From positions 39,703 to 103,702 of the forward strand of contig NIVC01003333.1 of NCBI GenBank assembly GCA_002269645.1: DNA of 64,000 nt. Direction: 5' to 3'. The translations under genes were made by a program, and so were the position numbers. This DNA comes from Macrostomum lignano. Lineage: Eukaryota. The notes under the pieces are model-generated. The model was not told the DNA's origin. It worked only from the letters and a program-made list of their open reading frames with translations, and did not search any database. Below are positions 1 to 24,944 of the stretch, in pieces; the first letter of the stretch is position 1, and every line of letters starts with the position of its first letter.

Positions 1-46
1 TGTCGGCCCAGACGACTAGAATCGCCGAGACATTCGCTGTGCCACT

Positions 47-865
47 ATGTTCCGGTATGTCATTGAGTGCTGCTTTGCTGCCATTAGGCAGGACAAATGT
101 TTTAACGAGAGGCACAAACCGAATCAGTGGCTGCAGTCAGCTGGCTTCAGCGAGCGCAGCCAATTAGACGTTATCGAGAACTCGATGGCAAAGTACAATC
201 GGGCGTTTCCACGTTTTGAATCATTTAAACAGCTGCCAACGTCATGGACAGGGCTATCGTTGTTCGAATTCGGTCAGAAGTTCATGCGCCGAGTGCTCTT
301 GTCCAATAAACTGGACGAAATTGAGCAGCTGCACTTCAACTGTGATCTGACGCGTGTCCCCCCTGCTAACACAACGGCATGGATTGCCGAAAACCCGCTG
401 GATCCAAAAAGCTCGGGGTTCCCCGAATTCACACAGAATCTGACAGATGTTTCGGTGGGTCCGTATCAACTATATCAAGCCGATGATTACATTCAAAACA
501 TTCGTGTCAATGAGGTTCTCGGTCTACGAAGGTGACTCCTGGAGAGACTTTGAGTCACTCACATCCGAACTTCCGAGCCACCTCAAGTATTGGAAGTTTC
601 GGTAAGAGACGCAGCCAGAAAACTGGAGCAACCGATTCGGTCGGTGGCATCCGTCTTGGATTTTTTCTAGCTGTCGTTTTCTCGCTCCATAATTCGAAAT
701 CCTACCGCGTGATTCTTAAGAGTGAGTGACAGCAGCGGACAATCGCTTTGGTTTTAGAGATCCAGGATTGCAACTTCTTCATGGCTACTACTCGTCAGCA
801 AAAGCTGGAGGTAGGACTGCAGGCTGCGATTGTCATGTAATGGCAGTGCTCAAACTCCTGGACTG
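47..865 (+). pseudogene. Decayed DDE_Tnp_4-like transposase C-terminus plus SWIM-like Zn finger (element copy 1)
   Basis: FRYVIECCFAAIRQ resembles the RWVVE..NGRLKQ third-acidic-residue motif. FPEFTQNLTDVSVGPYQLYQADDYIQ, SLHNSKSYRVIL and HGYYSSAKAGGRTAGCDCHVMAVLKLL (degenerate CxC..CxH) follow in order across frameshifts. Recognised by eye. Confidence 0.6.
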
Positions 866-1080
866 CTACGCTTACCACCAAGATAGCTATCGAAGGTCTG
901 GTACTAGCCTTCGCTTTGTTGATTCCGCTCTTCCACGCAGCCTTCCTTGTTGCCAGTCTTCATGCCAGAGAAAATGCTTTACCACAGCAGCGAAAGCCTA
1001 CTGAGCAACAGTTTAGCGGCCAGCAAGAGGCGTTTCAGTCAGCCAGCAGAAGCTCAGGATCCAAGCCTCAGTCTTCAAGA

Positions 1081-1775
1081 GTCTTTGGTCTTCAAAACCA
1101 TGGTCAGCAGTGCTACGCAATTGTTTTTGTACTGCTTCACTGCATCAGCAGCAAAGTCCAGCTCTTTCAGCCGCTCAGAGGTGGGGCAGTGAACATCGCA
1201 ATGACAAACCTGATGACGTCTATGGCGACTGAGCAAGCGTAGATCAACTTTTCGAAGCCAACCGAAGCCGATATCCGCAGCAGTTTGCGCCAAGACAGCA
1301 ACACTGCTGCTAACAGTGCATTCTGCCAGAGTCGCAGCAGCAGCGTCATTGCCTAATCGAATTTACACGTGCGGTAGTTGCCTGACTAGCACGGATGAGC
1401 TGCCCATAGGAGTTCTGGATAGTCGTATCCTCAGCATCTCCTTGCAGGAGTTTTCAACCGCGCCGTTAATTCTAGACGGTCTCTACGCTGCTTTTACGGC
1501 ACCAAAGCACGTCCCATGCACCAACACCAACTGTGCAGCTGATCAGGTCTCTAACGGCAGAGTGACCCTGATGCATATAGATCGCATTGGAACCGATGGT
1601 CAAAAACTGAATACGCAAGTCTGTTGGACAATCCGAGCAGGTAACATCTCCAGCTTGGGATGTCCAATGTTCACAGTGTCCCATTACGGTATAGTACGCC
1701 CTTGGAAGGGCACTATACATCTTGTGTCCTGAAAGATAGAGTATGGAATAAGCTGGACGACATGAGAGTTCCAAA
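1081..1775 (+). pseudogene. Decayed ubiquitin-specific protease (peptidase C19/USP) domain (element copy 1)
   Basis: Cys box GLQNHGQQCY, then TCGSC, LMHIDR..G.KLNTQV, VSHYG and, after a frameshift, His box GHYTSCV...WNKLDDMRV. Cys, His and Asp appear in USP order; stops and frameshifts are present. Confidence 0.7.
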
Positions 1776-2263
1776 AAACTACAATCCATTCGTTCATGAG
1801 CAATCCAAGGACCACTGAAGTCACTTCATTAAACTTAGTTGTCCTTGGAGCCCTGCTGCAAGTATAAAGAGACCCATGGGATCATCTGCGAGAATGTTTA
1901 CACAAAAACCCTTTCTGCAAACTAATGACCATACCGTTTCATTTTGTTTAAAAAAGCATCCGGAGCCTTGCTTTGGGCTCCATTCTAGAGACTTAAGTTG
2001 ACATGAGATTCCCATTTTATCCCCTTTATCCCCTGGGACCCCAAGGAAGGGACCCGGATGGGATGTCTCGGCGATTCTAGTCGTCTGGGCCGACAAGTTA
2101 TCGATTGCAGTCGGTTTGGTCCGGAGCTGAACTTCGGGCTCCATTCTGGTGCTTAAGTTGACATCCCCTTTGCTCTCAGAGTTTCTTCCCCAAAACAAAA
2201 AAAGCCAAGAAACAGCGCTTAATGCAATCACCGAAGTGAACTCGGATATTCGAAAAGTCACTG

Positions 2264-3674: not shown

Positions 3675-5700
3675 GAGTCAGTAGAGTCGCAGTCAGCAGA
3701 GGCCCAGTCCGAAGAATCCCTGTCAGCAGAGGCCCAGTCAGCAGAGGCCCAGTCAGTAGAGTCCCAGTCAGCAGAGGCCCAGTCAGTAGAGTCGCAGTCA
3801 GCAGAGGCCCAGTCAGTAGAGTCGCAGTCAGCAGAGGCCCAGTCAGCAGAGTCCCAGTCAGCAGAGGCCCAGTCAGCAGAGGCCCAGTCAGCAGAGTCCC
3901 AGTCAGCAGAGGCCCAGTCAGCAGAGGCCCAGTCAGTAGAGTCCCAGTCAGCAAAGGCCCAGTCAGTAGAGTCCCAGTCAGCAGAGGCCCAGTCATAGAG
4001 TCCCAGTCAGCAGAGGCCCAGTCAGTAGAGTCGCAGTCAGCAGAGACCCAGTCAGTAGAGTCCCAGTCAGCAGAGGCCCAGTCAGTAGAGTCCCAGTCAG
4101 CAGAGGCCCAGTCAGTAGAGTCCCAGTCAGCAGAGTCCCAGTCAGTAGAGTCCCAGTCAGCAGAGTCCCAGTCATAGAGTCCCAGTCAGTAGAGTCCCAG
4201 TCAGCAGATTCCCAGTCAGCAGAGGCCCAGTCAGTAGAGTCCCAGTCAGTAGAGTCCCAGTCGGCAGAGGCCCAGTCCTGCAGTAGAGTCCCAGTCAGTA
4301 GAGTCCCAGTCGGCAGAGGCCCAGTCAGTAGAGTCCCAGTCAGTAGAGTCCCAGTCAGTAGAGTCCCAGTCAGTAGAGTCCCAGTCAGCAGAGTCCCAGT
4401 CAGTAGAGTCCCAGTCAGTAGAGTCCCAGTCAGTAGAGTCCCAGTCAGTAGAGTCCCAGTCGGCAGAGGCCCAGTCCTGCAGTAGAGTCCCAGTCAGTAG
4501 AGTCCCAGTCGGCAGAGGCCCAGTCAGTAGAGTCCCAGTCAGTAGAGTCCCAGTCAGTAGAGTCCCAGTCAGTAGAGTCCCAGTCAGCAGAGTCCCAGTC
4601 AGTAGAGTCCCAGTCAGTAGAGTCCCAGTCAGTAGAGTCCCAGTCAGCAGAGTCCCAGTCATAGAGTCACAGTCAGTAGAGTCCCAGTCAGTAGAGTCCC
4701 AGTCAGCAGAGGCCCAGTCAGCAGAGGCCCAGTCAGTAGAGTCGCAGTCAGCAGAGGCCCAGTCAGTAGAGTCCCAGACAGTAGAGTCCCAGTCGGCAGA
4801 GGCCCAGTCAGTAGAGTCCCAGTCAGTAGAGTCCCAGTCAGTAGAGTCCCAGTCAGTAGAGTCCCAGTCAGTAGAGTCCCAGTCAGTAGAGTCCCAGTCA
4901 GTAGAGTCCCAGTCAGTAGAGTCCCAGTCAGTAGAGTCCCAGTCAGTAGAGTCCCAGTCAGTAGAGTCCCAGTCAGTAGAGTCCCAGTCAGTAGAGTCCC
5001 AGTCAGTAGAGTCCCAGTCAGTAGAGTCCCAGTCAGTAGAGTCCCAGTCAGTAGAGTCCCAGTCAGTAGAGTCCCAGTCAGCAGAGTCCCAGTCAGTAGA
5101 GTCCCAGTCAGTAGAGTCCCAGTCAGCAGAGTCCCAGTCATAGAGTCACAGTCAGTAGAGTCCCAGTCAGTAGAGTCCCAGTCAGCAGAGGCCCAGTCAG
5201 TAGAGTCCCAGTCAGCAGAGGCCCAGTCAGCAGAGGCCCAGTCAGTAGAGTCGCAGTCAGCAGAGGCCCAGTCAGTAGAGTCCCAGTCAGTAGAGTCCCA
5301 GTCGGCAGAGGCCCAGTCAGTAGAGTCCCAGTCAGTAGAGTCCCAGTCAGTAGAGTCCCAGTCAGTAGAGTCCCAGTCAGTAGAGTCCCAGTCAGTAGAG
5401 TCCCAGTCAGTAGAGTCCCAGTCAGTAGAGTCCCAGTCAGTAGAGTCCCAGTCAGTAGAGTCCCAGTCAGTAGAGTCCCAGTCAGTAGAGTCCCAGTCAG
5501 TAGAGTCCCAGTCAGTAGAGTCCCAGTCAGTAGAGTCCCAGTCAGTAGAGTCCCAGTCAGCAGAGTCCCAGTCAGTAGAGTCCCAGTCAGCAGAGGCCCA
5601 GTCAGTAGAGTCCCAGTCAGCAAAGGCCCAGTCAGTAGAGTCCCAGTCAGCAGAGTCCCAGTCAGTAGAGTCCCAGTCAGCAGAGGCCCAGTCAGTAGAG
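3675..5700. repeat. 15-bp satellite (CCCAGTCAGTAGAGT)n, ~2 kb
   Basis: Direct tandem array with internal higher-order duplications (e.g. ATAGAGTCACAG variant at ~4661 and ~5140). Confidence 0.95.
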
Positions 5701-6037
5701 TTTTTAATTACGACTTTACTCTCAGAGCTGCTCTCAGAAGTTCGTGAAAGCACGAAAGGGGATGTCAACTTAAGCACCAGAATGGAGCCCGAAGTTCAGC
5801 TCCGGACCAAACCGACTGCAATCGATAACTTGTCGGCCCAGACGACTAGAATCGCCGAGACATCCCATCCGGGTCTTTTCCTTGGGGTCCCAGGGGATAA
5901 AGGGGATAAAATGGGGATCTCATGTCAACTTAAGGTTCTGGAATGGAGCCCGAAGTTCAGCTCGGGACCAAAGCGACTGCAATCGATAACTTGTCGGCCC
6001 AGACGACTAGAATCGCCGAGACATTCGCTGTGCCACT

Positions 6038-6857
6038 ATGTTCCGGTATGTCATTGAGTGCTGCTTTGCTGCCATTAGGCAGGACAAATGTTTTAACGAG
6101 AGGCACAAACCGAATCAGTGGCTGCAGTCAGCTGGCTTCAGCGAGCGCAGCCAATTAGACGTTATCGAGAACTCGATGGCAAAGTACAATCGGGCGTTTC
6201 CACGTTTTGAATCATTTAAACAGCTGCCAACGTCATGGACAGGGCTATCGTTGTTCGAATTCGGTCAGAAGTTCATGCGCCGAGTGCTCTTGTCCAATAA
6301 ACTGGACGAAATTGAGCAGCTGCACTTCAACTGTGATCTGACGCGTGTCCCCCCTGCTAACACAACGGCATGGATTGCCGAAAACCCGCTGGATCCAAAA
6401 AGCTCGGGGTTCCCCCGAATTCACACAGAATCTGACAGATGTTTCGGTGGGTCCGTATCAACTATATCAAGCCGATGATTACATTCAAAACATTCGTGTC
6501 AATGAGGTTCTCGGTCTACGAAGGTGACTCCTGGAGAGACTTTGAGTCACTCACATCCGAACTTCCGAGCCACCTCAAGTATTGGAAGTTTCGGTAAGAG
6601 ACGCAGCCAGAAAACTGGAGCAACCGATTCGGTCGGTGGCATCCGTCTTGGATTTTTTCTAGCTGTCGTTTTCTCGCTCCATAATTCGAAATCCTACCGC
6701 GTGATTCTTAAGAGTGAGTGACAGCAGCGGACAATCGCTTTGGTTTTAGAGATCCAGGATTGCAACTTCTTCATGGCTACTACTCGTCAGCAAAAGCTGG
6801 AGGTAGGACTGCAGGCTGCGATTGTCATGTAATGGCAGTGCTCAAACTCCTGGACTG
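6038..6857 (+). pseudogene. Decayed DDE C-terminus plus SWIM-like remnant (copy 2)
   Basis: As copy 1, with one extra C in a C-run (GGGGTTCCCCCG) that shifts the frame. Confidence 0.6.
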
Positions 6858-7072
6858 CTACGCTTACCACCAAGATAGCTATCGAAGGTCTGGTACTAGC
6901 CTTCGCTTTGTTGATTCCGCTCTTCCACGCAGCCTTCCTTGTTGCCAGTCTTCATGCCAGAGAAAATGCTTTACCACAGCAGCGAAAGCCTACTGAGCAA
7001 CAGTTTAGCGGCCAGCAAGAGGCGTTTCAGTCAGCCAGCAGAAGCTCAGGATCCAAGCCTCAGTCTTCAAGA

Positions 7073-7767
7073 GTCTTTGGTCTTCAAAACCATGGTCAGC
7101 AGTGCTACGCAATTGTTTTTGTACTGCTTCACTGCATCAGCAGCAAAGTCCAGCTCTTTCAGCCGCTCAGAGGTGGGGCAGTGAACATCGCAATGACAAA
7201 CCTGATGACGTCTATGGCGACTGAGCAAGCGTAGATCAACTTTTCGAAGCCAACCGAAGCCGATATCCGCAGCAGTTTGCGCCAAGACAGCAACACTGCT
7301 GCTAACAGTGCATTCTGCCAGAGTCGCAGCAGCAGCGTCATTGCCTAATCGAATTTACACGTGCGGTAGTTGCCTGACTAGCACGGATGAGCTGCCCATA
7401 GGAGTTCTGGATAGTCGTATCCTCAGCATCTCCTTGCAGGAGTTTTCAACCGCGCCGTTAATTCTAGACGGTCTCTACGCTGCTTTTACGGCACCAAAGC
7501 ACGTCCCATGCACCAACACCAACTGTGCAGCTGATCAGGTCTCTAACGGCAGAGTGACCCTGATGCATATAGATCGCATTGGAACCGATGGTCAAAAACT
7601 GAATACGCAAGTCTGTTGGACAATCCGAGCAGGTAACATCTCCAGCTTGGGATGTCCAATGTTCACAGTGTCCCATTACGGTATAGTACGCCCTTGGAAG
7701 GGCACTATACATCTTGTGTCCTGAAAGATAGAGTATGGAATAAGCTGGACGACATGAGAGTTCCAAA
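7073..7767 (+). pseudogene. Decayed USP/C19 peptidase remnant (copy 2)
   Basis: Same Cys box and His box as copy 1. Confidence 0.7.
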
Positions 7768-8361
7768 AAACTACAATCCATTCGTTCATGAGCAATCCAA
7801 GGACCACTGAAGTCACTTCATTAAACTTAGTTGTCCTTGGAGCCCTGCTGCAAGTATAAAGAGACCCATGGGATCATCTGCGAGAATGTTTACACAAAAA
7901 CCCTTTCTGCAAACTAATGACCATACCGTTTCATTTTGTTTAAAAAAGCATCCGGAGCCTTGCTTTGGGCTCCATTCTAGAGACTTAAGTTGACATGAGA
8001 TTCCCATTTTATCCCCTTTATCCCCTGGGACCCCAAGGAAGGGACCCGGATGGGATGTCTCGGCGATTCTAGTCGTCTGGGCCGACAAGTTATCGATTGC
8101 AGTCGGTTTGGTCCGGAGCTGAACTTCGGGCTCCATTCTGGTGCTTAAGTTGACATCCCCTTTGCTCTCAGAGTTTCTTCCCCAAAACAAGAAAAGCCAA
8201 GAAACAGCGCTTAATGCAATCACCGAAGTGAACTCGGATATTCGAAAAGTCACTGTTTATTTTTCATATTCCACACAGAGATCTTTCAGTAAGTATTGTC
8301 AGTAGCATTCTGACGGCGTGAGCTGTGCAGAACGCAGAATAGAACTCGTTGCTTTTCATCT

Positions 8362-9916: not shown

Positions 9917-10414
9917 TTTTTAATTACGACTTTACTCTCAGAGCTGCTCTCAGAAGTTCGTGAAAGCACGAAAGGGGATGTCAACTTAAGCACCAGAATG
10001 GTGCCCGAAGTTCAGCTCCGGACCAAAGCGACTGCAATCGATAACTTGTCGGCCCAGACGACTAGAATCGCCGAGACATCCCATCCGGGTCCCTTCCTTG
10101 GGGTCCCAGGGGATAAAGGGGATAAAATGGGAATCTCATGTCAACTTAAGGCTCTGGAATGGAGCCCAAAGCAAGGCTCCGGACCAAACCGACTGCAATC
10201 GATAACTTGTCGGCCCAGACGACTAGAATCGCCGAGACATCCCATCTGGGTCTTTTCCTTGGGGTCCCAGGGGATAAAGGGGATAAAATGGGGATCTCAT
10301 GTCAACTTAAGGCTCTGGAATGGAGCCCGAAGTTCAGCTCGGGACCAAAGCGACTGCAATCGATAACTTGTCGGCCCAGACGACTAGAATCGCCGAGACA
10401 TTCGCTGTGCCACT

Positions 10415-11234
10415 ATGTTCCGGTATGTCATTGAGTGCTGCTTTGCTGCCATTAGGCAGGACAAATGTTTTAACGAGAGGCACAAACCGAATCAGTGGCT
10501 GCAGTCAGCCGGCTTCAGCGAGCGCAGCCAATTAGACGTTATCGAGAACTCGATGGCAAAGTACAATCGGGCGTTTCCACGTTTTGAATCATTTAAACAG
10601 CTGCCAACGTCATGGACAGGGCTATCGTTGTTCGAATTCGGTCAGAAGTTCATGCGCCGAGTGCTCTTGTCCAATAAACTGGACGAAATTGAGCAGCTGC
10701 ACTTCAACTGTGATCTGACGCGTGTCCCCCCTGCTAACACAACGGCATGGATTGCCGAAAACCCGCTGGATCCAAAAAGCTCGGGGTTCCCCCGAATTCA
10801 CACAGAATTTGACAGATGTTTCGGTGGGTCCGTATCAACTATATCAAGCCGATGATTACATTCAAAACATTCGTGTCAATGAGGTTCTCGGTCTACGAAG
10901 GTGACTCCTGGAGAGACTTTGAGTCGCTCACATCCGAACTTCCGAGCCACCTCAAGTATTGGAAGTTTCGGTAAGAGACGCAGCCAGAAAACTGGAGCAA
11001 CCGATTCGGTCGGTGGCATCCGTCTTGGATTTTTTCTAGCTGTCGTTTTCTCGCTCCATAATTCGAAATCCTACCGCGTGATTCTTAAGAGTGAGTGACA
11101 GCAGCGGACAATCGCTTTGGTTTTAGAGATCCAGGATTGCAACTTCTTCATGGCTACTACTCGTCAGCAAAAGCTGGAGGTAGGACTGCAGGCTGCGATT
11201 GTCATGTAATGGCAGTGCTCAAACTCCTGGGCTG
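10415..11234 (+). pseudogene. Decayed DDE C-terminus plus SWIM-like remnant (copy 3)
   Basis: Near-identical to copy 2. Confidence 0.6.
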
Positions 11235-11449
11235 CTACGCTTACCACCAAGATAGCTATCGAAGGTCTGGTACTAGCCTTCGCTTTGTTGATTCCGCTCT
11301 TCCACGCAGCCTTCCTTGTTGCCAGTCTTCATGCCAGAGAAAATGCTTTACCACAGCAGCGAAAGCCTACTGAGCAACAGTTTAGCGGCCAGCAAGAGGC
11401 GTTTCAGTCAGCCAGCAGAAGCTCAGGATCCAAGCCTCAGTCTTCAAGA

Positions 11450-12144
11450 GTCTTTGGTCTTCAAAACCATGGTCAGCAGTGCTACGCAATTGTTTTTGTA
11501 CTGCTTCACTGCATCAGCAGCAAAGTCCAGCTCTTTCAGCCGCTCAGAGGTGGGGCAGTGAACATCGCAATGACAAACCTGATGACGTCTATGGCGACTG
11601 AGCAAGCGTAGATCAACTTTTCGAAGCCAACCGAAGCCGATATCCGCAGCAGTTTGCGCCAAGACAGCAACACTGCTGCTAACAGTGCATTCTGCCAGAG
11701 TCGCAGCAGCAGCGTCATTGCCTAATCGAATTTACACGTGCGGTAGTTGCCTGACTAGCACGGATGAGCTGCCCATAGGAGTTCTGGATAGTCGTATCCT
11801 CAGCATCTCCTTGCAGGAGTTTTCAACCGCGCCGTTAATTCTAGACGGTCTCTACGCTGCTTTTACGGCACCAAAGCACGTCCCATGCACCAACACCAAC
11901 TGTGCAGCTGATCAGGTCTCTAACGGCAGAGTGACCCTGATGCATATAGATCGCATTGGAACCGATGGTCAAAAACTGAATACGCAAGTCTGTTGGACAA
12001 TCCGAGCAGGTAACATCTCCAGCTTGGGATGTCCAATGTTCACAGTGTCCCATTACGGTATAGTACGCCCTTGGAAGGGCACTATACATCTTGTGTCCTG
12101 AAAGATAGAGTATGGAATAAGCTGGACGACATGAGAGTTCCAAA
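11450..12144 (+). pseudogene. Decayed USP/C19 peptidase remnant (copy 3)
   Basis: Same Cys box and His box as copy 1. Confidence 0.7.
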
Positions 12145-12738
12145 AAACTACAATCCATTCGTTCATGAGCAATCCAAGGACCACTGAAGTCACTTCATTA
12201 AACTTAGTTGTCCTTGGAGCCCTGCTGCAAGTATAAAGAGACCCATGGGATCATCTGCGAGAATGTTTACACAAAAACCCTTTCTGCAAACTAATGACCA
12301 TACCGTTTCATTTTGTTTAAAAAAGCATCCGGAGCCTTGCTTTGGGCTCCATTCTAGAGACTTAAGTTGACATGAGATTCCCATTTTATCCCCTTTATCC
12401 CCTGGGACCCCAAGGAAGGGACCCGGATGGGATGTCTCGGCGATTCTAGTCGTCTGGGCCGACAAGTTATCGATTGCAGTCGGTTTGGTCCGGAGCTGAA
12501 CTTCGGGCTCCATTCTGGTGCTTAAGTTGACATCCCCTTTGCTCTCAGAGTTTCTTCCCCAAAACAAGAAAAGCCAAGAAACAGCGCTTAATGCAATCAC
12601 CGAAGTGAACTCGGATATTCGAAAAGTCACTGTTTATTTTTCATATTCCACACAGAGATCTTTCAGTAAGTATTGTCAGTAGCATTCTGACGGCGTGAGC
12701 TGTGCAGAACGCAGAATAGAACTCGTTGCTTTTCATCT

Positions 12739-14295: not shown

Positions 14296-14553
14296 TTTTT
14301 AATTATGACTTTACTCTCAGAGCTGCTCTCAGAAGTTCGTGAAAGCACGAAATTTGCTCTCAGAGTTTCTTCCCCAAAACAAAAAAAGCCAAGAAACAGC
14401 GCTTAATGCAATCACCGAAGTGAACTCGGATATTCGAAAAGTCACTGTTTATTTTTCATATTCCACACAGAGATCTTTCAGTAAGTATTGTCAGTAGCAT
14501 TCTGACGGCGTGAGCTGTGCAGAACGCAGAATAGAACTCGTTGCTTTTCATCT

Positions 14554-14703: not shown

Positions 14704-15534
14704 GCTGTTTCTTGAAGATGTGAACTTGTTGCAGCCGATAATCTTGTAGGAGGATTTGTAGGCTTGATTTTGTGCCATTGCTCAGTGTTATATTTATAGA
14801 TTCAAGATCCCATAAAACACGGCTGCAATCGTTTAAATCACGCACTGCTTCTCAAGCAGCTCCCAGAAAATTATTCGACTTTCTGCTCAGGTTGCAATAA
14901 ATTTTCATGTCCCTGGATTGAGTTTGATTGGTGTATTAGAGTTATTTTGGATACATACATGTAGATAGATACCTACCGACAAACAATTTTTAACATATTG
15001 ACTAGCCATTTAGCCCCCCCCCGGCTGGGGGGCCATAAAAATGACACAAATTGGTTTTTATTTTGGCCCAAAGGTAACCATTAATTTCCATTTCCATTAA
15101 TAAAAAATTAAGTTTTCTGATTTTGGCAAAAATAAATTGACATGAATCAAAACTTACACCAGCCAAAAAAGTTTCCTTCATCAGGCCAAAACCCTTTTTC
15201 AATCAGCAAATATTCTTATCCTTTCAAGCACAAACTCTTAAAACATGTCGTCATTGGCCTGGGCATATTCTGGTCCGCAGCAGGAGCTCAATATGCCAAT
15301 CCCTGACGGCCTTACACCTCTCTTTTTTAGCCAAAGTCAAAGAACCAATAAGCATTAACCTTCAATAAATACGCTGGTATTTCCTATATTTCCTATTAGC
15401 AGAAATCAGCATCACTTGTGTGTACTATTTCAATATCAAATATTCAAATTAAATGAGCTACTTGTGCCATACTACTTGACGATCTGACAATCGCTCAACA
15501 ATCCAACCCCCTCCCCCAACAATTCAGCGATCCT

Positions 15535-16140
15535 TCATGAGCCTTGATATCTCAGCAATTCCCCCAGTAAGCCTCGAAATCGCAGCAATTAATCATCTAC
15601 GCAATTCTCCCAGCCCAGTAAACTTTGACATGTCAGCAATTCCCTCAGGAAGCCTTGAAATCTCAGCAATTTCCTCAATAAGCCTCGACATCGCAGCAAT
15701 TACTTCAGCCTTGACATCTTCGCAATTCTCCCAGCCCAGTAAGCCTTGACATACATCCCAACAACCCAACTCCCCTCCCCCAACAATTCAGCCATCCCCC
15801 ATGAGCCTTAATATATCAATAATTAAGTCATCTCCCATGAGCCTTGATACCTCAGCAATTCCCATAGTAAGTCTTGACATCTCAGAAATTTCCTCAGTAA
15901 GCCTTGGCATCTCAGCGATTCCCCCAGTAGGCCTTGGCATCTCAGAAATTTCATCAGTGAGCCTTGACATCTCAGCGATTCCCCCAGTAAGCCTTGGCAT
16001 CTCAGAAATTTTATCAGTGAGCCTTGACATCTCAGCGATTCCCCCAGTAAGCCTTGGCATCTCAGAAATTTTATCAGTGAGCCTTGACATCTCAGCGATT
16101 CCCCCAGTAAGCCTTGAAATCTCAGAAATTTCTTCAGTAA
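15535..16140 (+). repeat. 30/60-bp minisatellite (AGCCTTGACATCTCAGCGATTCCCCCAGTA / AGCCTTGGCATCTCAGAAATTTTATCAGTG)
   Basis: Alternating 30-bp subunits, more degenerate at the left. Confidence 0.9.
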
Positions 16141-17384
16141 GACTTGGCGGCATCATGGCGGTGAACCATTGCTAAACTGCTGGTGAACCATTGCTAAAGT
16201 GATAGGGAACCACTGTACTTTTTTTATAAATCCTACTTTAAACAAAAGAAAACACAACGAAAGAAAAAGCGAAAAAGAATCACCATGTCAACCATAAAAA
16301 AGCGGTCTGTCGAGCATAAAAGACTCCATGGGAATTGCTAAAATGTCTGGGCTGGTATGGGAAATTGCTTTGATGTCAAGACTCATATAGGAGAATTTCC
16401 AAGATCTCAAGGCTTAGGGGGGAATTGCTATAATGATTTGATTCTGGGGAGAATCGCTTTGATTTCAAGTTTCATTTGTGAAATTGCTGAGTTATATAAA
16501 GGCTCATTGGAAAATTGCTTTGCTGTCAAAGCTCATTGGGATAATTACTGGAATGCTGTGGCTGTTGGGGAATGGCATAGATTGATAGGGTAAGGTATAT
16601 GTAAGGGTTAAACCATAAATGAATCGGCCTGTCAAACATTAAGACTCATCAAGGAATGTCAAAGCTCATGGGGGATATCTGGATTATACTGTGGCTCAAG
16701 GCTCAGGGAAACGCTGTGATTGCAAGACTTGGGGATATTGCCTAAATTTTGTGGCTCAATTTGGAGTTTCTGAGATATCAAGGCTCATTATGGAATCATG
16801 AAATGTCAATGCTCACGGGGGATCCCTGTAATGCTGTAGACTGTGGCTCTTTGGGTATTGCTGAGATGCTAAGGTTTACAGGACACATGAGACTGGCTGA
16901 GATGTCAAAGGCTCATAAGGGAATAGCTGAAATTCACGAATTGTCAAGAGTAATTGCTGAAATTCTGTAGTTCATATTGAGAATTGCTGAGATGCTGTGA
17001 CTTGGCAGGTTTAGGGTTAGGGTTCAACAATAAGACTCATGTAAATTGCCAAGATATCAAAAGGTTAGCCGCTAAATTTTAAGGCTCATTGGGGAAAGTT
17101 TTAGATTTCAAAAGCTCATGGTGGAATTGCTGAAATTCTTGGGCTGAGAAGGAGCTGCTGAACTGCTGTGACTCGGCTGCAGGTTAAGGGCTATGGTTTG
17201 GGTTCAATTATAAAACAATCGTCGTGTCAGACATAAAGGATTCCTGGTGGAATTGCTAAGATTAAAGGCTCATGGGGTGAATTATTATACTTACAGATAA
17301 ATGCTTTGTCTTGCTTGCAGAATTGCTTGCAGGTCAAAGCTTTCGGCGAAATATAGATTTAAAGGCATATGAGGCTTATGATAA

Positions 17385-17780
17385 TTGATGAGATGCCAAG
17401 GCTTACTGGGGGAATCGCTGAGATGTTAAGGCTTACTGAGGAAATTTCTGAGATGCCAAGGCTTACTGGGGGAATCGCTGAGATGTCAAGGCTTACTGAT
17501 GAAATTTCTGAGATTCCAAGGCTTACTGGGGGAATCGCTGAGATGTCAAGGCTTACTGATGAAATTTCTGAGATTTCAAGGCTTACTGGGGAATCGCTGA
17601 GATGTCAAGGCTTACTGATGAAATTTCTGAGATTTCAAGGCTTACTGGGGGAATCGCTGAGATGTCAAGGCTTACTGATGAAATTTCTGAGATTTCAAGG
17701 CTTACTGGGGGAATCGCTGAGATGTCAAGGCTTACTGATGAAATTTCTGAGATGCCAAGGCTTACTGATGAAATTTCTGG
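17385..17780 (-). repeat. Same 30/60-bp minisatellite in inverted orientation
   Basis: GCTTACTGGGGGAATCGCTGAGATGTCAAG is the reverse complement of the 15535-16140 unit. Confidence 0.9.
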
Positions 17781-18193
17781 CAATGGTTCACTGGCACTGT
17801 TCCGCAAAATCTGCAAGCAGATGGTCACTCATCTCCATATGCTTCTTCAATAATCAAAACCATTCGAAATATTTGCAACTTGCACTTTAAATTTGATTTG
17901 CAATCCTCTTGCATTTTTATTACTTCATTGTAAGTCAGATTAGCACTGCTCACCCAGATTACTAATACCCTTAGCAAATTAGCACATACAGCAGATTAGC
18001 ACTGCTCTAGAATACTAACGCGGCCCCTAGCAAAAGTATCTTTTAATTAAATGTTTAACATCTCCATGAATCTGCATCGGATACAATCATTATTATCACA
18101 GGTCACAAAGAAAAATTCTTTGCTTCAATGCAGACTCGAACTCGACATTCTGCTTAGCTTCTGCCTGATACTGACTGCCTACTGCGGCTATTG

Positions 18194-18388
18194 TGCCAGT
18201 CAGTAGAGTCCCAGTCAGTAGAGTCCCAGTCAGCAGAGGCCCAGTCAGCAGAGGCCCAGTCAGCAGAGGACCAGTCAGCAGAGTCCCAGTCAGCAGAGGC
18301 CCAGTCAGCAGAGGCCCAGTCAGCAGAGGACCAGTCAGCAGAGTCCCAGTCAGTAGAGTCCCAGTCAGTAGAGTCCCAGTCAGTAGAG
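18194..18388. repeat. 15-bp satellite array
   Basis: Same unit, followed by the same anchor and an empty AAATTT site (18443-18448). Confidence 0.95.
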
Positions 18389-18566
18389 TTTTTAATTATG
18401 ACTTTACTCTCAGAGTTGCTCTCAGAAGTTCGTGAAAGCACGAAATTTGCTCTCAGAGTTTCTTCCCCAAAACATAAAAGCCAAGAAACAGCGCTTAATG
18501 CAATCACCGAAGTGAACTCGGATATTCGAAAAGTCTTCATTAAAGCTAACAAACGGTCGATACCAG

Positions 18567-21107: not shown

Positions 21108-21816
21108 AAGCTCGCTGGTGAAGGATGCTGAGACTCTCTGAGCTGCTTTCGCACGACTCCACACGCCCTTCCCTCTGCCTACCCTCCCGCTTTGTACGAT
21201 TCTGATGTACATGTCTAGGCGGCATCTATAGGATGTTTACACACACGGCTCAGAGCCCCAGGTAGACAGGTGTAAGCGGGTACAGCCACAGGGGTGTTTT
21301 TATAACGAGCTGAGTCAATTACGAGCTGTTACTGAAGTCAGCGTGGCTGAATCGCTTCCCACACGAAAGTGAACATGCAGGACACAGAGTGCACCTAAGT
21401 TTCAGACAGAATATTTGCTCTGAATTAGCAATTCAGAGGCTTGTAAATGCAACTTTGCAAAATTTTTATCAATTCTAAAGAAACTAAAGAAATCTCAATT
21501 GATTTTCTAAGCGATCTAGCAATGAAAACGCGATTGTAGCAGATAAAACGGCAAAAAGTTTTTAATTACGACTTTACTCTCAGAGTTGCTCTCAGAAGTT
21601 CGTGAAAGTACGAAATTTGCTCTCAGAGTTTCTTCCCCAAAACAAGAAAAGCCAAGAAACAGCGCTTAATGCAATCACCGAAGTGAACTCGGATATTCGA
21701 AAAGTCACTGTTTATTTTTCATATTCCACACAGAGATCTTTCAGTAAGTATTGTCAGTAGCATTCTGACGGCGTGAGCTGTGCAGAACGCAGAATAGAAC
21801 TCGTTGCTTTTCATCT

Positions 21817-21966
21817 CTACCTCCTGCAAGTGTCGCCCTTGCATGACGGCGAATCACCGAGGCAGATCTCGTTTATGCAGTAACAGAGTGGACCACAGAG
21901 ATCATCTGCATTTACAGTTGCCAACAGCGCAACGATGAGGACCAACAGAGCAAACAGAACTCGCAT
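21817..21966 (-). CDS. Secreted six-cysteine peptide precursor, copy 5 (type-B unit)
   Basis: Identical translation; empty AAATTT site at 21613-21618. Confidence 0.85.
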   Translation of the reverse strand: MRVLFALLVLIVALLATVNADDLCGPLCYCINEICLGDSPSCKGDTCRR

Positions 21967-22780
21967 GCTGTTTCTTGAAGATGTGAACTTGTTGCAGCCG
22001 ATAATCTTGTAGGAGGATTTGTAGGCTTGATTTTGTGCCATTGCTCAGTGTTATATTTATAGATTCAAGATCCCATAAAACACGGCTGCAATCGTTTAAA
22101 TCACGCACTGCTTGTCAAGCAGCTCCCAGAAAATTATTCGACTTTCTGCTCAGGTTGCAATAAATTTTCATGTCCCTGGATTGAGCTTGATTGATGGTTT
22201 AGAGTTAATTCGCATGGCGTTAACTAACATTTGACATTTTCTCCACCCCTGCAAAATAAGCGAAACTGCATTTGAACTGTGCGCAGGCACGCTGGAGGCT
22301 GTTCACAAGGACTTTTTCTCGTTGCCGAGGCATCAAAACTCTCACCTGCGTGCCGGTTCCTCCAAAATCTAAAAATCGACCTGTAAATGTTCACATACGC
22401 TCGTAAGCTAAACAGATTTTGATGGATTGACAAGCTCTTAATCTCTTAAGCTCTTAGATTTCAACTTCGATGCAAAGCAACTCAAGGGGGCGCTAACGCA
22501 CATGACGGAAGCACATGACCGTTGGTTCTGCTTTCAGGAAGCGACACTGAGCTGCCCACATAACATTTTGTACAAATTGAGTCTCAAATTCTGAATTCAA
22601 TCGCACATTCCTACCGACAAATCAATTTTAGTACGAGTATATAGAATTTAAATTTTCACACAATAACAGATAAAAGAATTCCTTTATAGAATTTTCATTC
22701 ATGTCGTAGAATGAAATTCGTATGTAATGTGTCATATCTCATACACACTGATAAGAGAAATGATAAGAGTCTGCAGAATT

Positions 22781-22941
22781 TCAGTCAGTAGAGTCCCAGT
22801 CAGTACAGTCCCAGTCAGCAGAGTCCCAGTCAGCAGAATTCCAGTCAGTAGAGTGCCAGTCAGCAGAGTGCCAGTCAGTAGAGTGCCAGTCATTAGAGTG
22901 CCAGTCAGTACAGTCCCAGCCAGCAGAGTCCCAGTCAGTAG
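22781..22941. repeat. 15-bp satellite, diverged short array
   Basis: CCAGTCAGTAGAGT(C/G) units. Confidence 0.9.
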
Positions 22942-23189
22942 AAAAACTGTGAAGTTAAGTTCAGTGTGTTGGCGCAGCTCCACACAGCTTCTCCTTTGAT
23001 GAGGATGCATGCTCCGCGCCGTGGGCTTGCCTTGGCGGCTTTTCTTTCAGCGAGGCCACTTCTGCTGTCTAAGGCCCTGCCTGACCGAGAGAGGGCCTTG
23101 GTGAGAGTCACTGTCAGTTTTGGTATCACTGTCTTATGATGAGAGTCACCGTCCATCTTGGCGGGTATCGGTGTCTCTCATGATTAGAG

Positions 23190-23890
23190 TCACTGCAGTA
23201 TCTCTTGGTGAATTTCACTGTCTCGCATGGTGAGTGTCACTGTCTCTCATGGTGCGTGTCACTGTCTCTCATGGTGAGTGTCACTGTCTCTCATGATGAG
23301 TGTCACTGTCTCTCATGGTGCGTGTCACTGTCTCTCATAGTGAGTGTCACTGTCTCTCATGGTGCGTGTCACTGTCTCTCATGGTGAGTGTCACTGTCTC
23401 TCATGATGAGTGTCACTGTCTCTCATGGTGCGTGTCACTGTCTCTCATAGTGAGTGTCACTGTCTCTCATGGTGAATTTCGCTATCTCTCATGGTCAGTG
23501 TCACTGTCTCTCATGGTGAGTGTCACTGTCTCTCATGGTGCGTGTCACTGTCTCTCATGGTGAATTTCGCTGTCTCTCATGGTGAATTTCGCTGTCTCTC
23601 ATGGTTAGTGTCACTGTCTCTCATGGTGCGTGTCACTGTCTCTCATGGTGAGTGTCACTGTCTCTCATGGTGAATTTCACTTTCACTCATGGTGAGTGTC
23701 ACTCTCTCTCATTGTGAATTTCACTGTCACTCATGGTGAATTTCACTGTCTCTCATGGTGAGTGTCACTGTCACTCATGGTGAGTGTCACTGTCTCTCAT
23801 GGTGAATTTCACTGTCACTCATGGTGAGTGTCACTGTCAGTTTAAGTGAGCGCCACTGTCTCATGATGAGTGCCTCATCTCTGGTGAGTG
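23190..23890. repeat. 22-bp satellite (CTGTCTCTCATGGTGAGTGTCA)n
   Basis: Tandem 22-mers with variants. Confidence 0.9.
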
Positions 23891-23925
23891 TCAGTAGTTT
23901 CTCTTTTGGGGAGTGTCACTTCAGT

Positions 23926-24310
23926 TAGCCCTGGAGACAGTAGCGGTGATGTCAATAGCACTCATGACAGCCCTGGAGACAGTAGCGGTGATGTCAATAG
24001 CAATCATGACAGCCCTGGAGACAGTAGCGGTGATGTCAATAGCACTCATGACAGCCCTGGAGACAGTAGCGGTGATGTCAATAGCACTCATGACAGCCCT
24101 GGAGACAGTAGCGGTGATGTCAATAGCACTCATGACAGCCCTGGAGACAGTAGCGGTGATGTCAATAGCACTCATGACAGCCCTGGAGACAGTAGCGGTG
24201 ATGTCAATAGCACTCATGACAGCCCTGGAGACAGTACCGGTGATGTCAATAGCACTCATGACAGCCCTGGAGACAGTAGCGGTGATGTCAATAGCAGCTC
24301 ATGACAGCCT
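23926..24310. repeat. 42-bp tandem repeat (~9 copies)
   Basis: GCCCTGGAGACAGTAGCGGTGATGTCAATAGCACTCATGACA. Confidence 0.95.
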
Positions 24311-24794
24311 ATGCCTTCCTATGCCTGAATCGCTTCTCACACGAAAGTGAACATGCAGGACACAGAGTGCACCAAAGTTTTGGACAGAATATTTGCTCTG
24401 AATTAGCAATTCAGAGGCTTGTAAATGCAACTTTGGAAAATTTTTATCAATTCTGAAGAAACTAAAGAAATCTCAATTGATTTTCTAAGCGATCTAGCAA
24501 TGAAAACGCGATTGTAGCAGATAAAACGGCAAAAAGTTTTTAATTACGACTTTACTCTCAGAGTTGCTCTCAGAAGTTCGTGAAAGTACGAAATTTGCTC
24601 TCAGAGTTTCTTCCCCAAAACAAGAAAAGCCAAGAAACAGCGCTTAATGCAATCACCGAAGTGAACTCGGATATTCGAAAAGTCACTGTTTATTTTTCAT
24701 ATTCCACACAGAGATCTTTCAGTAAGTATTGTCAGTAGCATTCTGACGGCGTGAGCTGTGCAGAACGCAGAATAGAACTCGTTGCTTTTCATCT

Positions 24795-24944
24795 CTACCT
24801 CCTGCAAGTGTCGCCCTTGCATGACGGCGAATCACCGAGGCAGATCTCGTTTATGCAGTAACAGAGTGGACCACAGAGATCATCTGCATTTACAGTTGCC
24901 AACAGCGCAACGATGAGGACCAACAGAGCAAACAGAACTCGCAT
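24795..24944 (-). CDS. Secreted six-cysteine peptide precursor, copy 6 (type-B unit)
   Basis: Identical translation; 2978 bp from copy 5; empty AAATTT site at 24591-24596. Confidence 0.85.
   Translation of the reverse strand: MRVLFALLVLIVALLATVNADDLCGPLCYCINEICLGDSPSCKGDTCRR

What the first reader, a model, noticed from the sequence alone, without database searches (positions are those of the whole stretch)
5758..8160. TSD-less AAA|TTT (Spy-like) transposon carrying SWIM and USP deubiquitinase cargo, with filled and empty sites side by side
Seen: filled sites read GCACGAAA-GGGGATGTCAAC...GTTGACATCCCC-TTTGCTCTC (both junctions at 5758-8160 and 9974-12537; right junction at 2168). Four empty sites read CGAAATTTGCTCTC (14350, 18443, 21613, 24591). 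The element therefore inserted between AAA and TTT with no duplication. Established: this is the defining behaviour of Spy elements (PHIS group). Motif inference: the interior holds the C-terminal part of a DDE_Tnp_4-like transposase, a SWIM-like finger, and a USP/C19 domain with recognisable Cys box (GLQNHGQQCY) and His box (GHYTSCV..WNKLDD). Ulp1 and OTU proteases are known TE cargo, but I do not recall a C19 USP in a Spy-type element. This may be an undescribed lineage whose autonomous parent encodes its own deubiquitinase.
Basis: partly seen in the sequence, partly recalled or inferred. Interest (0 to 1): 0.8.

Follow-up and report, generated by a model that had tools for sequence, protein, structure and literature searches.

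The report
Dead Spy-like transposon with deubiquitinase remnant
A decayed, non-autonomous cut-and-paste transposon in a flatworm-like genome inserted between AAA and TTT without duplicating its target, as Spy elements do, and its broken gene is the tail of an unusual transposase that appears to be fused to a ubiquitin-specific protease.

Summary
A 2,403-bp element (5758-8160) has 210-bp inverted ends and lies exactly between AAA and TTT, and four paralogous empty sites read AAATTT.

- **One insertion event.** The three filled sites come from one insertion that was copied along with its host repeat unit.
- **Interior.** It is the 3' two-thirds of a single transposase gene, running from the catalytic R-x3-E motif onward. 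It is broken by 8 frame changes and at least one stop codon.
- **Intact relatives.** Relatives from a JGI metagenome, Logan assemblies and Tara Oceans samples carry a C2H2 finger, HTH_Tnp_4, a weak DDE_Tnp_4 match and a conserved C-terminal Cys/His domain.
- **USP part.** It follows the Cys/His domain in the same reading direction and recurs in a 71%-identical copy. Pfam UCH passes its threshold only on a two-copy chimera (E 4e-6).
- **SWIM.** This is not confirmed.
- **Spy clade.** Membership by transposase phylogeny could not be tested. The DDE spacing, the zinc finger and the terminal motif all differ from published Spy elements.
- **Second junction.** A left end in a related contig is also preceded by AAA.

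Verdict: a new variant of a known kind, in a phylum where Spy has not been reported. The nearest named hit is Macrostomum lignano. Interest is moderate.

The parts
5755..5757 (.). Left half of the target site (AAA), host DNA
   Evidence: Filled and empty sites compared
5758..5967 (+). Left terminal inverted repeat, 210 nt, beginning GGGGATGTCAACTTAAG
   Evidence: pair I1, 94% complementary
5762..6024 (+). Subterminal 161-bp direct repeat, 1.6 copies here and 2.6 copies in copy 3. Each unit repeats the terminal ATGTCAACTTAAG motif.
   Evidence: D1; TRF period 161 at 9978-10401
6026..6936 (+). Remnant of the transposase gene, from the R-x3-E catalytic motif (RCATMFRYVIECCF, 6026-6067) through the conserved C-terminal domain (ENWSNRFGRWHPSWIF, 6610-6657). 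It contains five changes of reading phase and a TAA stop at 6595-6597. The zinc finger, the HTH and the first two catalytic Asp residues are deleted.
   Evidence: 50% identity to P0002 residues 366-524
6814..6831 (+). Relatives read C-x2-4-C...GCCSHV. In the window, L002 and L004 the first Cys pair is missing.
   Evidence: no Pfam SWIM match
6937..7069 (+). Q/S/P-rich linker between the transposase C-terminal domain and the USP part, containing one further change of reading phase
   Evidence: Alignment A1 with L004 and L002
7070..7810 (+). USP (peptidase C19) remnant. Motifs in order: Cys box RVFGLQNHGQQCYA (7070-7111), QQ box (7228-7296), CxxC YTCGSC (7356-7373), PCTNTNC (7506-7526), FTVSHYG (7662-7682), His box EGHYTSCV (7697-7720), WNKLDDMRV (7736-7762), stop at 7808-7810. 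It contains three changes of reading phase.
   Evidence: Pfam PF00443 E 0.016 for the window alone, E 0.0097 for L004, E 4.3e-6 and 27 bits for the chimera; the only PDB hits are USP14 chains; coordinates
7951..8160 (-). Right terminal inverted repeat, ending GTTGACATCCCC
8161..8163 (.). Right half of the target site (TTT), host DNA
1..2168 (+). Copy 1 of the same insertion, cut off by the start of the window. It lacks the 1-bp insertion at 6412, so an ORF of 162 aa (47-535) stays open.
9974..12537 (+). Copy 3 of the same insertion, 2,564 bp, with one extra 161-bp subterminal unit
14350..14355 (.). Paralogous empty site AAATTT
18443..18448 (.). Paralogous empty site AAATTT
21613..21618 (.). 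Paralogous empty site AAATTT, in a more diverged host unit
24591..24596 (.). Paralogous empty site AAATTT, in a unit whose compared flanks (590 bp right, 70 bp left) are identical to those of the unit at 21613

Best explanation
The element at 5758-8160 is a dead, non-autonomous deletion derivative of a cut-and-paste DNA transposon from a PHIS-like (PIF/Harbinger-ISL2EU-Spy) lineage.

**Parent element (inferred from relatives).** Its single long gene would encode, in order: a C2H2 zinc finger, an HTH_Tnp_4 DNA-binding domain, a divergent DDE catalytic core, a family-specific C-terminal domain with a Cys/His cluster, a Q-rich linker, and, at least in the flatworm-like sublineage, a USP-class deubiquitinase domain.

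**This copy (shown).** It lost roughly the first 360 codons and joins the left subterminal repeat directly to the codons just before the catalytic Glu. It keeps both 210-bp inverted ends, so it could only have moved using transposase supplied by a full-length copy. The coding remnant has since decayed.

**Insertion (shown).** It inserted once into the centre of an AAATTT inside a roughly 1.8-kb host repeat unit, without duplicating or deleting any host base. The unit plus element was then tandemly duplicated into three copies.

**Mechanism (inferred).** The transposase cuts both target strands flush between A3 and T3, as proposed for Spy, so no staggered gap is left to be filled. The USP domain would remove ubiquitin from the transposase or from host proteins at the integration site. 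This is by analogy with the OTU and VTD deubiquitinases of Helitrons and the Ulp1 proteases of MULEs.
For: **Termini, inverted repeats and junctions without a target duplication:**

**Single event plus duplication:** the elements are 99.4-99.9% identical. The host flanks of the filled units differ by 0-1 of 590 positions among themselves and by 5-6 from the empty units.

**Gene identity**
- An exhaustive HMMER search with ORF 47-535 found 8 proteins.
- P0002 (560 aa) is 50% identical over the whole ORF. It has a C2H2 finger, HTH_Tnp_4 at E 2e-4 and DDE_Tnp_4 at E 0.011.
- P0006 (1,043 aa, Tara Oceans) has DDE_Tnp_4 at E 0.025.
- The family profile matches C2H2 fingers in the PDB at E 4e-8.
- The motifs GDHTY, FDRGY and R-x3-E align across the relatives, and the window ORF starts at R-x3-E.

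**Family is multicopy.** P0001 (named by UniRef as Macrostomum lignano) and P0003 are gene models that read through other copies, including their inverted-repeat peptides.

**USP**
- L004 is a 71%-identical copy that starts at the same deletion breakpoint. One frame continues from GCDCHV through a Q-rich linker into PRVFGLRNRGLQCYANVVVQLF....
- Pfam UCH matches the N-terminal part in L004 (E 0.0097, profile positions 1-59) and the C-terminal part in the window (E 0.016, profile positions 204-236).
- The chimera of the two scores 27 bits against a threshold of 23.9.
- The only PDB hits are USP14 chains, with the Cys box and His box both aligned.

**Second junction.** L002 positions 99-119 read AAAGAGGATGTCAACTTAGGC. 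This matches the window's AAAGGGGATGTCAACTTAAGC at 19 of 21 positions. It lies on the coding strand, 798 bp upstream of the P0002 start codon.

**Literature.** Spy elements insert between AAA and TTT without a target duplication (PMC4122938, PMC11304231).
Against: - Only one complete insertion event and one half junction support the AAA|TTT rule. AAATTT occurs 81 times in this window.
- No reference Spy transposase was available, so placement in the Spy clade is untested.
- The relatives read D(93)D(80-85)E by my reading of the motifs. Published Spy elements have D(79-80)D(44-62)E.
- The relatives have a C2H2 finger, whereas most Spy transposases have none.
- The terminus GGGGATGTC fits the GGANNNNG consensus only with a 2-nt offset and one mismatch.
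- The inverted repeats have a sub-repeat structure, unlike the long Spy inverted repeats described so far.
- All Pfam matches to DDE_Tnp_4, HTH_Tnp_4 and UCH on natural sequences are below the curated thresholds. UCH passes only on a chimera that I assembled from two copies, choosing the frames by eye.
- No full-length copy with an intact transposase-USP reading frame was recovered. L002 ends inside the linker. L004 appears to belong to the same deletion subfamily as the window copy. The USP could therefore have been acquired by that subfamily alone.
- The more distant relatives (P0006, P0007, P0008) have no USP.
Confidence: 0.72

Rival explanations
1. The USP-like segment is a host-gene fragment captured once by the ancestor of this non-autonomous subfamily (transduplication). 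On this reading it is not part of the autonomous transposase.
For: The two copies that show the USP part are the window element and L004. Both start at the same 5' deletion breakpoint, so they may share one ancestor. The distant intact relatives P0006 and P0008 stop 41-53 residues after the Cys/His motif, and no USP lies downstream in L001.
Against: In L004 the USP part is in the same frame as the transposase C-terminal domain, joined by a Q-rich linker with a single stop. In L002, an autonomous-type copy with its 5' region and N-terminal domains, the frame stays open for 75 residues past GCDCHV. It runs into a similar S/Q/P-rich linker up to the end of the contig. That is further than where the distant relatives stop. 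The composite search that included the repaired USP region returned no host USP-like protein, only P0001, which matches the transposase part.
Confidence: 0.2
2. The element belongs to a separate PHIS-like or unclassified lineage, not to Spy. Insertion without a target duplication at AAA|TTT is then either convergent or an atypical single event.
For: The DDE spacing, the N-terminal C2H2 finger, the roughly 1,000-aa protein and the terminal motif all differ from published Spy features (PMC4122938). Spy has been reported only from arthropods, cnidarians, molluscs and a rotifer (PMC4122938, PMC11304231). Only one full event was observed.
Against: An insertion exactly at the centre of AAATTT with no duplication has a chance of about 0.1% per position in this window (81 sites in 64 kb). 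A related element in L002 also has AAA next to its terminus. The gene shows the PHIS hallmarks R-x3-E, HTH_Tnp_4 and DDE_Tnp_4, the element has a single ORF, and the inverted repeat starts with GG.
Confidence: 0.25
3. The three filled sites are three independent insertions by a target-specific element into the same site of a repeated host unit.
For: All three sit at the identical position of consecutive units.
Against: The filled units share host variants. They differ by 0-1 of 590 positions among themselves and by 5-6 from the empty units. The elements differ from each other no more than their flanks do. Copies 2 and 3 share the same frameshifts, and all three copies are equally decayed. This is not expected from separate recent transpositions.
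Confidence: 0.04
4. The USP resemblance is spurious, and 6937-7950 is non-coding filler.
For: There is no Pfam hit on the raw reading frames. Each natural sequence gives only sub-threshold hits. The PDB hits have E of about 1.
Against: Two diverged copies independently give UCH as the top Pfam family, at the correct N-terminal and C-terminal positions of the profile. Six USP motifs occur in the canonical order with normal spacing. The catalytic Cys, His and Asp are present. All four PDB hits are chains of USP14.
Confidence: 0.08

Closest known systems
Spy elements (PHIS superfamily; Han et al. 2014, PMC4122938; cgSpy, PMC11304231)
   Same: Insertion is exactly between AAA and TTT with no target-site duplication, verified here by paralogous empty sites, the same test used in the original paper. 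The element has terminal inverted repeats of a length within the published range (5-1,474 bp) that start with GG. It has a single-ORF architecture with an HTH plus a DDE core carrying R-x3-E. Non-autonomous deletion derivatives are common in Spy families too.
   Different: The host is flatworm-like, a phylum not reported for Spy. The relatives carry an N-terminal C2H2 zinc finger. The apparent spacing is D(93)D(80-85)E rather than D(79-80)D(44-62)E. There is a large conserved C-terminal Cys/His domain followed by a USP domain, giving a protein of about 1,000 aa rather than about 700 aa. The terminus GGGGATGTC is only an offset match to GGANNNNG. The inverted repeats contain 161-bp sub-repeats. 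Clade membership was not tested.
PIF/Harbinger and ISL2EU (the other PHIS groups)
   Same: They share the weak DDE_Tnp_4 and HTH_Tnp_4 similarity, the R-x3-E motif and inverted repeats that begin with GG.
   Different: Those groups make TWA (3-bp) or AT (2-bp) target duplications and need a second ORF (Myb/SANT or YqaJ). Here there is no duplication, and no second ORF was seen in L001 or L002.
Transposon-encoded proteases and deubiquitinases: OTU and VTD in Helitrons/Helentrons (PMC9741609), Ulp1 in MULEs (from my own knowledge)
   Same: In each case a papain-like ubiquitin or ubiquitin-like protease is carried within the transposon's own protein-coding region. This suggests the element benefits from removing ubiquitin-type modifications.
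   Different: Here the protease is of the USP (C19) class and is attached to a DDE cut-and-paste transposase. My literature searches found no USP-class domain reported in a DNA transposon. The absence of a report is not proof.
MULE / FAR1-type transposases with a C-terminal SWIM finger
   Same: Both have long inverted repeats and a Cys/His cluster C-terminal to the catalytic core. In the distant relatives this reads C-x2-4-C...C-x-H followed by a helix.
   Different: There is no 8-11-bp target duplication and no Pfam match to MULE or SWIM. The window copy lacks the first Cys pair. A predicted structure has no significant match in the PDB.

Membership tests
Spy group (PHIS) | [quoted passage not shown] | tested here: met
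   One complete event was compared with four paralogous empty sites. One further left junction, AAA|GAGGATGTCAAC, was found in related contig L002. The sample is small.
Spy group (PHIS) | Terminal inverted repeats with the terminal consensus 5'-GGANNNNG-3' | tested here: inconclusive
   Inverted repeats of 210 nt are present. The terminus is GGGGATGTCAAC. GGA starts at nt 3, and the eighth position of the motif is then A, not G. The paper calls this motif only 'relatively well conserved'.
Spy group (PHIS) | A single long ORF encoding a D(79-80)D(44-62)E transposase | tested here: not met
   The window copy lacks both Asp residues. The relatives P0002 and P0006 have a single ORF but read D(93)D(80)E and D(93)D(85)E by motif positions. 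The first Asp is anchored by the Pfam DDE_Tnp_4 alignment. My assignment of the second Asp is by eye.
Spy group (PHIS) | An N-terminal HTH and, in most members, no zinc finger | tested here: inconclusive
   P0002 has HTH_Tnp_4 at E 2e-4, below the threshold. P0002 and P0006 also have a C2H2 finger.
Spy group (PHIS) | The DDE core falls in the Spy clade, sister to ISL2EU, in a phylogeny | not testable with these tools
   No reference Spy, ISL2EU or Harbinger transposase sequences could be obtained. The paper supplements hold none.
PHIS superfamily / Pfam DDE_Tnp_4 | A DDE_Tnp_4-type catalytic core including the R-x3-E block | tested here: inconclusive
   R-x3-E is present in the window (RYVIE, within RCATMFRYVIECCF at 6026-6067) and in all relatives. 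PF13359 gives E 0.011 for P0002 and E 0.025 for P0006, both below the threshold of 24.8 bits. NCBIfam and the PDB give no transposase match.
USP / peptidase C19 (PF00443) | A Cys box with the catalytic Cys (G-L-x-N-x-G-N-T-C-Y) | tested here: met
   The window reads GLQNHGQQCY (within 7070-7111) and L004 reads GLRNRGLQCY. Pfam UCH profile positions 1-59 match L004 at E 0.0097. USP14 aligns over this box.
USP / peptidase C19 (PF00443) | A His box with the catalytic His and Asp/Asn (G-H-Y...W...D-D..V) | tested here: met
   EGHYTSCV...WNKLDDMRV lies at 7697-7762. Pfam UCH profile positions 204-236 match at E 0.016. USP14 aligns over this box.
USP / peptidase C19 (PF00443) | The whole domain reaches Pfam's curated score | tested here: inconclusive
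   The score is 27 bits against a threshold of 23.9, but only for a chimera of the L004 N-terminal part and the frame-repaired rest from the window. Each natural sequence alone scores 15-16 bits.
USP / peptidase C19 (PF00443) | Deubiquitinase activity | not testable with these tools
   This needs an intact family member and a biochemical assay.
SWIM zinc finger (PF04434) | The C-x-C-x(n)-C-x-H signature with a profile match | tested here: not met
   There is no Pfam SWIM match at E<=10 for the window or for the relatives. The window, L002 and L004 keep only GCDCH. The distant relatives have C-x2-4-C...GCCSH. An AlphaFold model (pLDDT 62) has no PDB match better than E 0.9.
Mutator-like elements (MULE) | An 8-11-bp target-site duplication and a MULE transposase domain | tested here: not met
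   There is no duplication and no MULE Pfam match.
Helitron | Insertion between A and T, no inverted repeats, and a Rep/helicase protein | tested here: not met
   Inverted repeats of 210 nt are present. The gene is DDE-like and there is no Rep/helicase match.

The most novel reading that the evidence does not exclude
A previously undescribed lineage, related to or sister of Spy, is present in flatworms and in marine plankton. Its autonomous transposase is naturally fused to a USP-class deubiquitinase. It would be the first cut-and-paste DDE transposase with a built-in C19 deubiquitinase, and it integrates flush between AAA and TTT without a target-site duplication.
Probability: 0.45. Interest if true: 0.7.

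Novelty: new variant of a known kind. Interest (0 to 1): 0.55.

Why it matters
Spy elements are the only eukaryotic cut-and-paste transposons known to integrate without a target-site duplication. One of them, cgSpy, is already being developed as a gene-transfer tool.

A related lineage with a different transposase architecture would matter in three ways:
- It would widen the known host range to a new phylum.
- It would provide a comparison for working out which protein features produce flush target cleavage.
- It would add the USP class to the set of ubiquitin-type proteases that transposons have recruited independently (Ulp1, OTU, VTD). That would strengthen the idea that escaping ubiquitin-dependent control is a recurring need of mobile DNA.

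The copy in this window is itself dead and has no function. Its value is as a pointer to the family.

Tried and rejected
**Searches that found nothing**
- Pfam on the three raw forward frames of 6025-7950 gave no hit even at E<=10.
- Pfam on the hand-repaired transposase/Cys-His region gave nothing.
- phmmer of the window-only repaired USP against the PDB gave nothing.
- The word-indexed protein search found nothing with ORF 47-535. It also found nothing with the inverted-repeat peptide, although P0001 contains that peptide. Its recall is clearly incomplete, and all three searches are now used.
- The look-up of encoding contigs has no record for P0001, so there is no DNA for the Macrostomum lignano copies.
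- The metagenome scan with a 22-nt inverted-repeat core found no match. The scan with alignment A1 matched 133 patterns but none was confirmed.
- NCBIfam gave no hit, and Rfam and tRNA scans were negative.
- The family profile against the PDB matched only C2H2 fingers.
- The AlphaFold model of the C-terminal domain (pLDDT 62) had no significant Foldseek match in the PDB.

**Attempts to find more element boundaries**
- No convincing inverted repeats were found in L001 or L002.
- L001 and L005 are collinear at 98.5% over 5 kb, and their 3' divergence point is ambiguous.
- L006, L007 and L008 are collinear to the ends of the contigs.

**Literature**
- No Spy transposase sequences are held in the supplements.
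- The Zisupton paper is not held in the library.

**Ideas considered and rejected**
- A MULE or Zisupton-type element: rejected because there is no target duplication and no domain match.
- A Helitron: rejected because inverted repeats are present.
- A 2-bp AT target duplication as in ISL2EU: rejected because the junction bases exclude it.
Full report
**1. The observation**

The terminal 12-mer GGGGATGTCAAC occurs five times in the window. It is on the + strand at 5758 and 9974, and as its reverse complement ending at 2168, 8160 and 12537. Shuffled sequence gives 0.16 expected. CGAAATTTGCTCTC occurs four times, at 14348, 18441, 21611 and 24589.

Reading the sequence and aligning the flanks gives these two forms:
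- filled: ...GTGAAAGCACGAAA|GGGGATGTCAAC...GTTGACATCCCC|TTTGCTCTCAGAG...
- empty: ...GTGAAAGCACGAAATTTGCTCTCAGAG...

The bases next to each boundary differ between element and host. The boundaries therefore cannot be shifted, and no host base is duplicated or lost. The element at 5758-8160 is 2,403 bp long. Its inverted ends are 210 nt and 94% complementary. Each end contains a 161-bp subterminal direct repeat that repeats the terminal ATGTCAACTTAAG motif. No other copy or fragment lies in the window.

**2. One event, not three**

Copies 1, 2 and 3 differ by five substitutions, a 1-bp indel at 6412 and one extra 161-bp unit in copy 3.

The host sequence is a tandem array of variable units that contain minisatellites. 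The 590 bp to the right of the three filled sites differ by 0-1 positions among themselves. They differ by 5-6 positions from the empty units. The two empty units at 21616 and 24594 are identical to each other.

The simplest reading is a single insertion followed by tandem duplication of unit plus element. The empty units remain valid paralogous empty sites, which is the same test used in the original Spy paper. However, the evidence for a target rule from this window is a single event. AAATTT is common here, at 81 copies in 64 kb. A random insertion point would hit the centre of one about 0.1% of the time.

**3. What the interior is**

The raw frames give no Pfam hit, and the word-indexed protein search with ORF 47-535 found nothing. 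A composite query then found P0001. This is a UniRef entry from Macrostomum lignano (Platyhelminthes). It is a gene model reading through another, shorter copy of the same element, and it includes peptides translated from the inverted repeat.

An exhaustive HMMER search with the intact 162-aa ORF of copy 1 found eight proteins:
- **P0002** (560 aa, JGI metagenome contig L002) is 50% identical across the whole ORF.
- **P0006/P0009** (1,043 aa) come from marine metagenome assemblies held in ENA. P0006's contig is a Tara Oceans scaffold.
- **P0007 and P0008** are more distant relatives. P0008's cluster lies on Tara Oceans contigs.
- **P0003** is a chimeric gene model that covers a third copy.
- **P0004 and P0005** lie on Logan contigs L003 and L004.

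P0002 and P0006 carry an N-terminal C2H2 finger. The family profile matches C2H2 fingers in the PDB at E 4e-8. P0002 also has HTH_Tnp_4 at E 2e-4. Both have weak DDE_Tnp_4 matches that start just after a GDHTY/YDHTY motif, at E 0.011 and 0.025.

The alignment shows conserved D (DHTY), D (FDRGY/FDKGY) and R-x3-E blocks. After these comes a conserved C-terminal domain that ends in G(Y/W)(A/G)C-x2-4-C-K-x-G-x-R-x-L-G-(C/M)-C-S-H.

The window ORF begins at RCATMFRYVIECCF, which is the R-x3-E block. About 360 N-terminal codons, which cover the finger, the HTH and both Asp residues, have been deleted. The breakpoint abuts the inner subterminal repeat at 6024/6026.

**4. State of the gene**

Using P0002, P0003, P0005 and L004 as guides, the coding path in copy 2 changes reading phase eight times:

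| Segment | Phase | Notable content |
|---|---|---|
| 6026-6412 | 2 | R-x3-E block |
| 6441-6515 | 0 | |
| 6517-6657 | 1 | TAA at 6595-6597, where relatives have Gln |
| 6656-6712 | 2 | |
| 6730-6936 | 1 | GCDCHV at 6814-6831 |
| 6995-7231 | 2 | Cys box |
| 7228-7296 | 1 | QQ box |
| 7356-7682 | 0 | CxxC motifs |
| 7697-7807 | 2 | His box; stop at 7808-7810 |

Copy 1 lacks the first frameshift. The element is a dead pseudogene copy. It lacks the catalytic Asp residues, so even before it decayed it could only have been moved by transposase supplied from another copy.

**5. The SWIM claim**

In the window, L002 and L004 the first Cys pair is absent (SSAKAGGRTAGCDCH). The distant relatives keep C-x2-4-C...C-C-S-H.

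No sequence gives a Pfam SWIM match at E<=10. An AlphaFold model of P0008 built on the family alignment has pLDDT 62, with residues 110-315 mostly at 70-90. It has no Foldseek match in the PDB better than E 0.9. I therefore describe this as a family-specific Cys/His domain. It resembles SWIM in its pattern only.

**6. The USP claim**

The decisive lead is L004, from a Logan assembly of run SRR31252258. It is 71% identical in nucleotides to 6026-6863 and starts exactly at the same deletion breakpoint. One frame continues from ...SSAKAGSRTAGCDCHVMAVL... through a Q-rich linker with one stop. It then reads PRVFGLRNRGLQCYANVVVQLFRCVDREVQAIQ...LQFPQQFQPQQQ, where the contig ends. This aligns collinearly with window 7070-7296. 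On its own it gives UCH at E 0.0097 over profile positions 1-59.

A chimera of the L004 N-terminal part and the rest from the window scores 27 bits at E 4.3e-6. That is above the curated 23.9 bits, and it matches in two stretches. The only PDB hits of the chimera are four USP14 sequences. They are weak (E about 1), but both the Cys box and the His box align. Six USP motifs occur in the canonical order, and the catalytic Cys, His and Asp are present.

I conclude that the USP remnant is real, with probability about 0.9, and that it is a feature of the family rather than of this one copy.

It lies in the same orientation and, in L004, in the same frame as the transposase tail. L002 is an autonomous-type copy with its 5' region and N-terminal domains. 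It stays open for 75 residues past the Cys/His motif and runs into a similar linker up to the end of the contig. A transposase-USP fusion is therefore the most likely reading.

It is not proven, for three reasons. No complete intact copy was recovered. L004 probably belongs to the same deletion subfamily as the window copy. The distant relatives end soon after the motif and have no USP.

**7. Is it Spy?**

The published defining features are these (PMC4122938):
- insertion at AAA|TTT with no target duplication;
- a single ORF with D(79-80)D(44-62)E;
- an N-terminal HTH, usually with no zinc finger;
- inverted repeats of 9-1,474 bp with a GGANNNNG terminus, and no sub-repeats in the long inverted repeats.

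cgSpy integrates between AAA and TTT in experiments, and Spy is reported from arthropods, cnidarians and molluscs (PMC11304231). A rotifer is also listed in PMC4122938.

The insertion behaviour is met here. A second, independent left junction supports it. L002 positions 99-119 read AAAGAGGATGTCAACTTAGGC, which matches window 5755-5775 at 19 of 21 positions. It is on the coding strand, 798 bp upstream of the start codon.

The single ORF, the HTH, the R-x3-E block and the GG start of the inverted repeat also fit PHIS. These features do not fit Spy as described:
- the apparent spacing D(93)D(80-85)E;
- the C2H2 finger;
- the protein of about 1,000 aa;
- the offset terminal motif;
- the sub-repeats in the inverted repeats.

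The decisive test is a phylogeny of the DDE core. It could not be run because no reference sequences were obtainable. I therefore say the element works like Spy. I classify it as a Spy-like PHIS lineage and not as a demonstrated member of Spy.

**8. Mechanism**

*Shown*
- The anatomy of the element.
- Flush insertion at the centre of AAATTT.
- The 5' deletion and the decay of the gene.
- Amplification by duplication of the host array.

*Inferred*
- Mobilisation by a full-length transposase that binds the repeated terminal motifs.
- Blunt cleavage of the target between A3 and T3, so no gap is filled.
- A deubiquitinating function for the USP domain. It might protect the transposase from degradation or act on ubiquitinated chromatin or repair factors at the integration site. 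This is by analogy with the OTU and VTD domains of Helitrons (PMC9741609) and Ulp1 in MULEs (my own knowledge).

**9. Novelty and score**

My literature searches found no USP-class domain in a DNA transposon and no description of Spy in flatworms. The kind of element is known, namely a Spy-like cut-and-paste transposon that makes no target duplication. The architecture and the host phylum appear to be new.

The copy in the window is a dead relic. The key claims rest on sub-threshold profile matches, one chimera and very few junctions. Interest is 0.55, and novelty is "new variant of a known kind".

Noticed in passing
window 15616-16148 and 17383-17779: There are inverted arrays of a 30/60-bp minisatellite (TGAGATGTCAAGGCTTACTGAGGAAATTTC). 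The arms are about 210 nt, 93% complementary and about 1.25 kb apart. This foldback-like structure sits in the stretch 14948-18195, which interrupts one host unit and has no counterpart in the other units.
   Followed up: partly
window 21344-27300: A 2,978-bp tandem duplication, 98-100% identical, carries two of the empty sites. It also carries 22-bp and 42-bp minisatellites. The array is evidently being remodelled by unequal exchange.
   Followed up: partly
window 3676-5701: A 15-bp minisatellite (AGTCAGTAGAGTCCC) has expanded to about 135 copies in one host unit, against about 17 copies in its neighbours. On the minus strand it gives a 372-aa open frame (DWDST repeats) that runs into the left end of the element.
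   Followed up: no
window 33830-36729 (+): A run of ORFs includes one with a hAT C-terminal dimerisation domain (PF05699, E 8e-6). This is probably a decayed hAT transposon.
   Followed up: no
window 59387-61030 (-): A 547-aa open frame has an LDL-receptor class A module (PF00057, E 8e-6). This is consistent with a metazoan host. ORF 63352-63828 also has a weak sub-threshold New_glue match.
   Followed up: no
L001 (2010-5141) and L005 (1256-4387): Two marine metagenome contigs held in ENA (L005 is a Tara Oceans scaffold) are 98.5% identical over 5 kb. Both encode an intact 1,043-aa relative of this transposase, with a C2H2 finger, a DDE-like core and the Cys/His domain but no USP. It may be a still-active element in an AT-rich planktonic eukaryote.
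   Followed up: partly
L006 (2-421 and 556-1548): In the P0008 group the FDRGY block and the R-x3-E block lie in separate ORFs. They are divided by an Arg/Gly-rich stretch and about 135 bp. This is either an intron or an insertion between the second Asp and the Glu.
   Followed up: no
P0001 and P0003 (Macrostomum lignano gene models): Public gene models translate straight through copies of this transposon, including its inverted repeats. P0003 fuses it with THAP, PRP4 and reverse-transcriptase-like pieces. These appear to be annotation artefacts caused by the inverted repeat being free of stop codons.
   Followed up: partly
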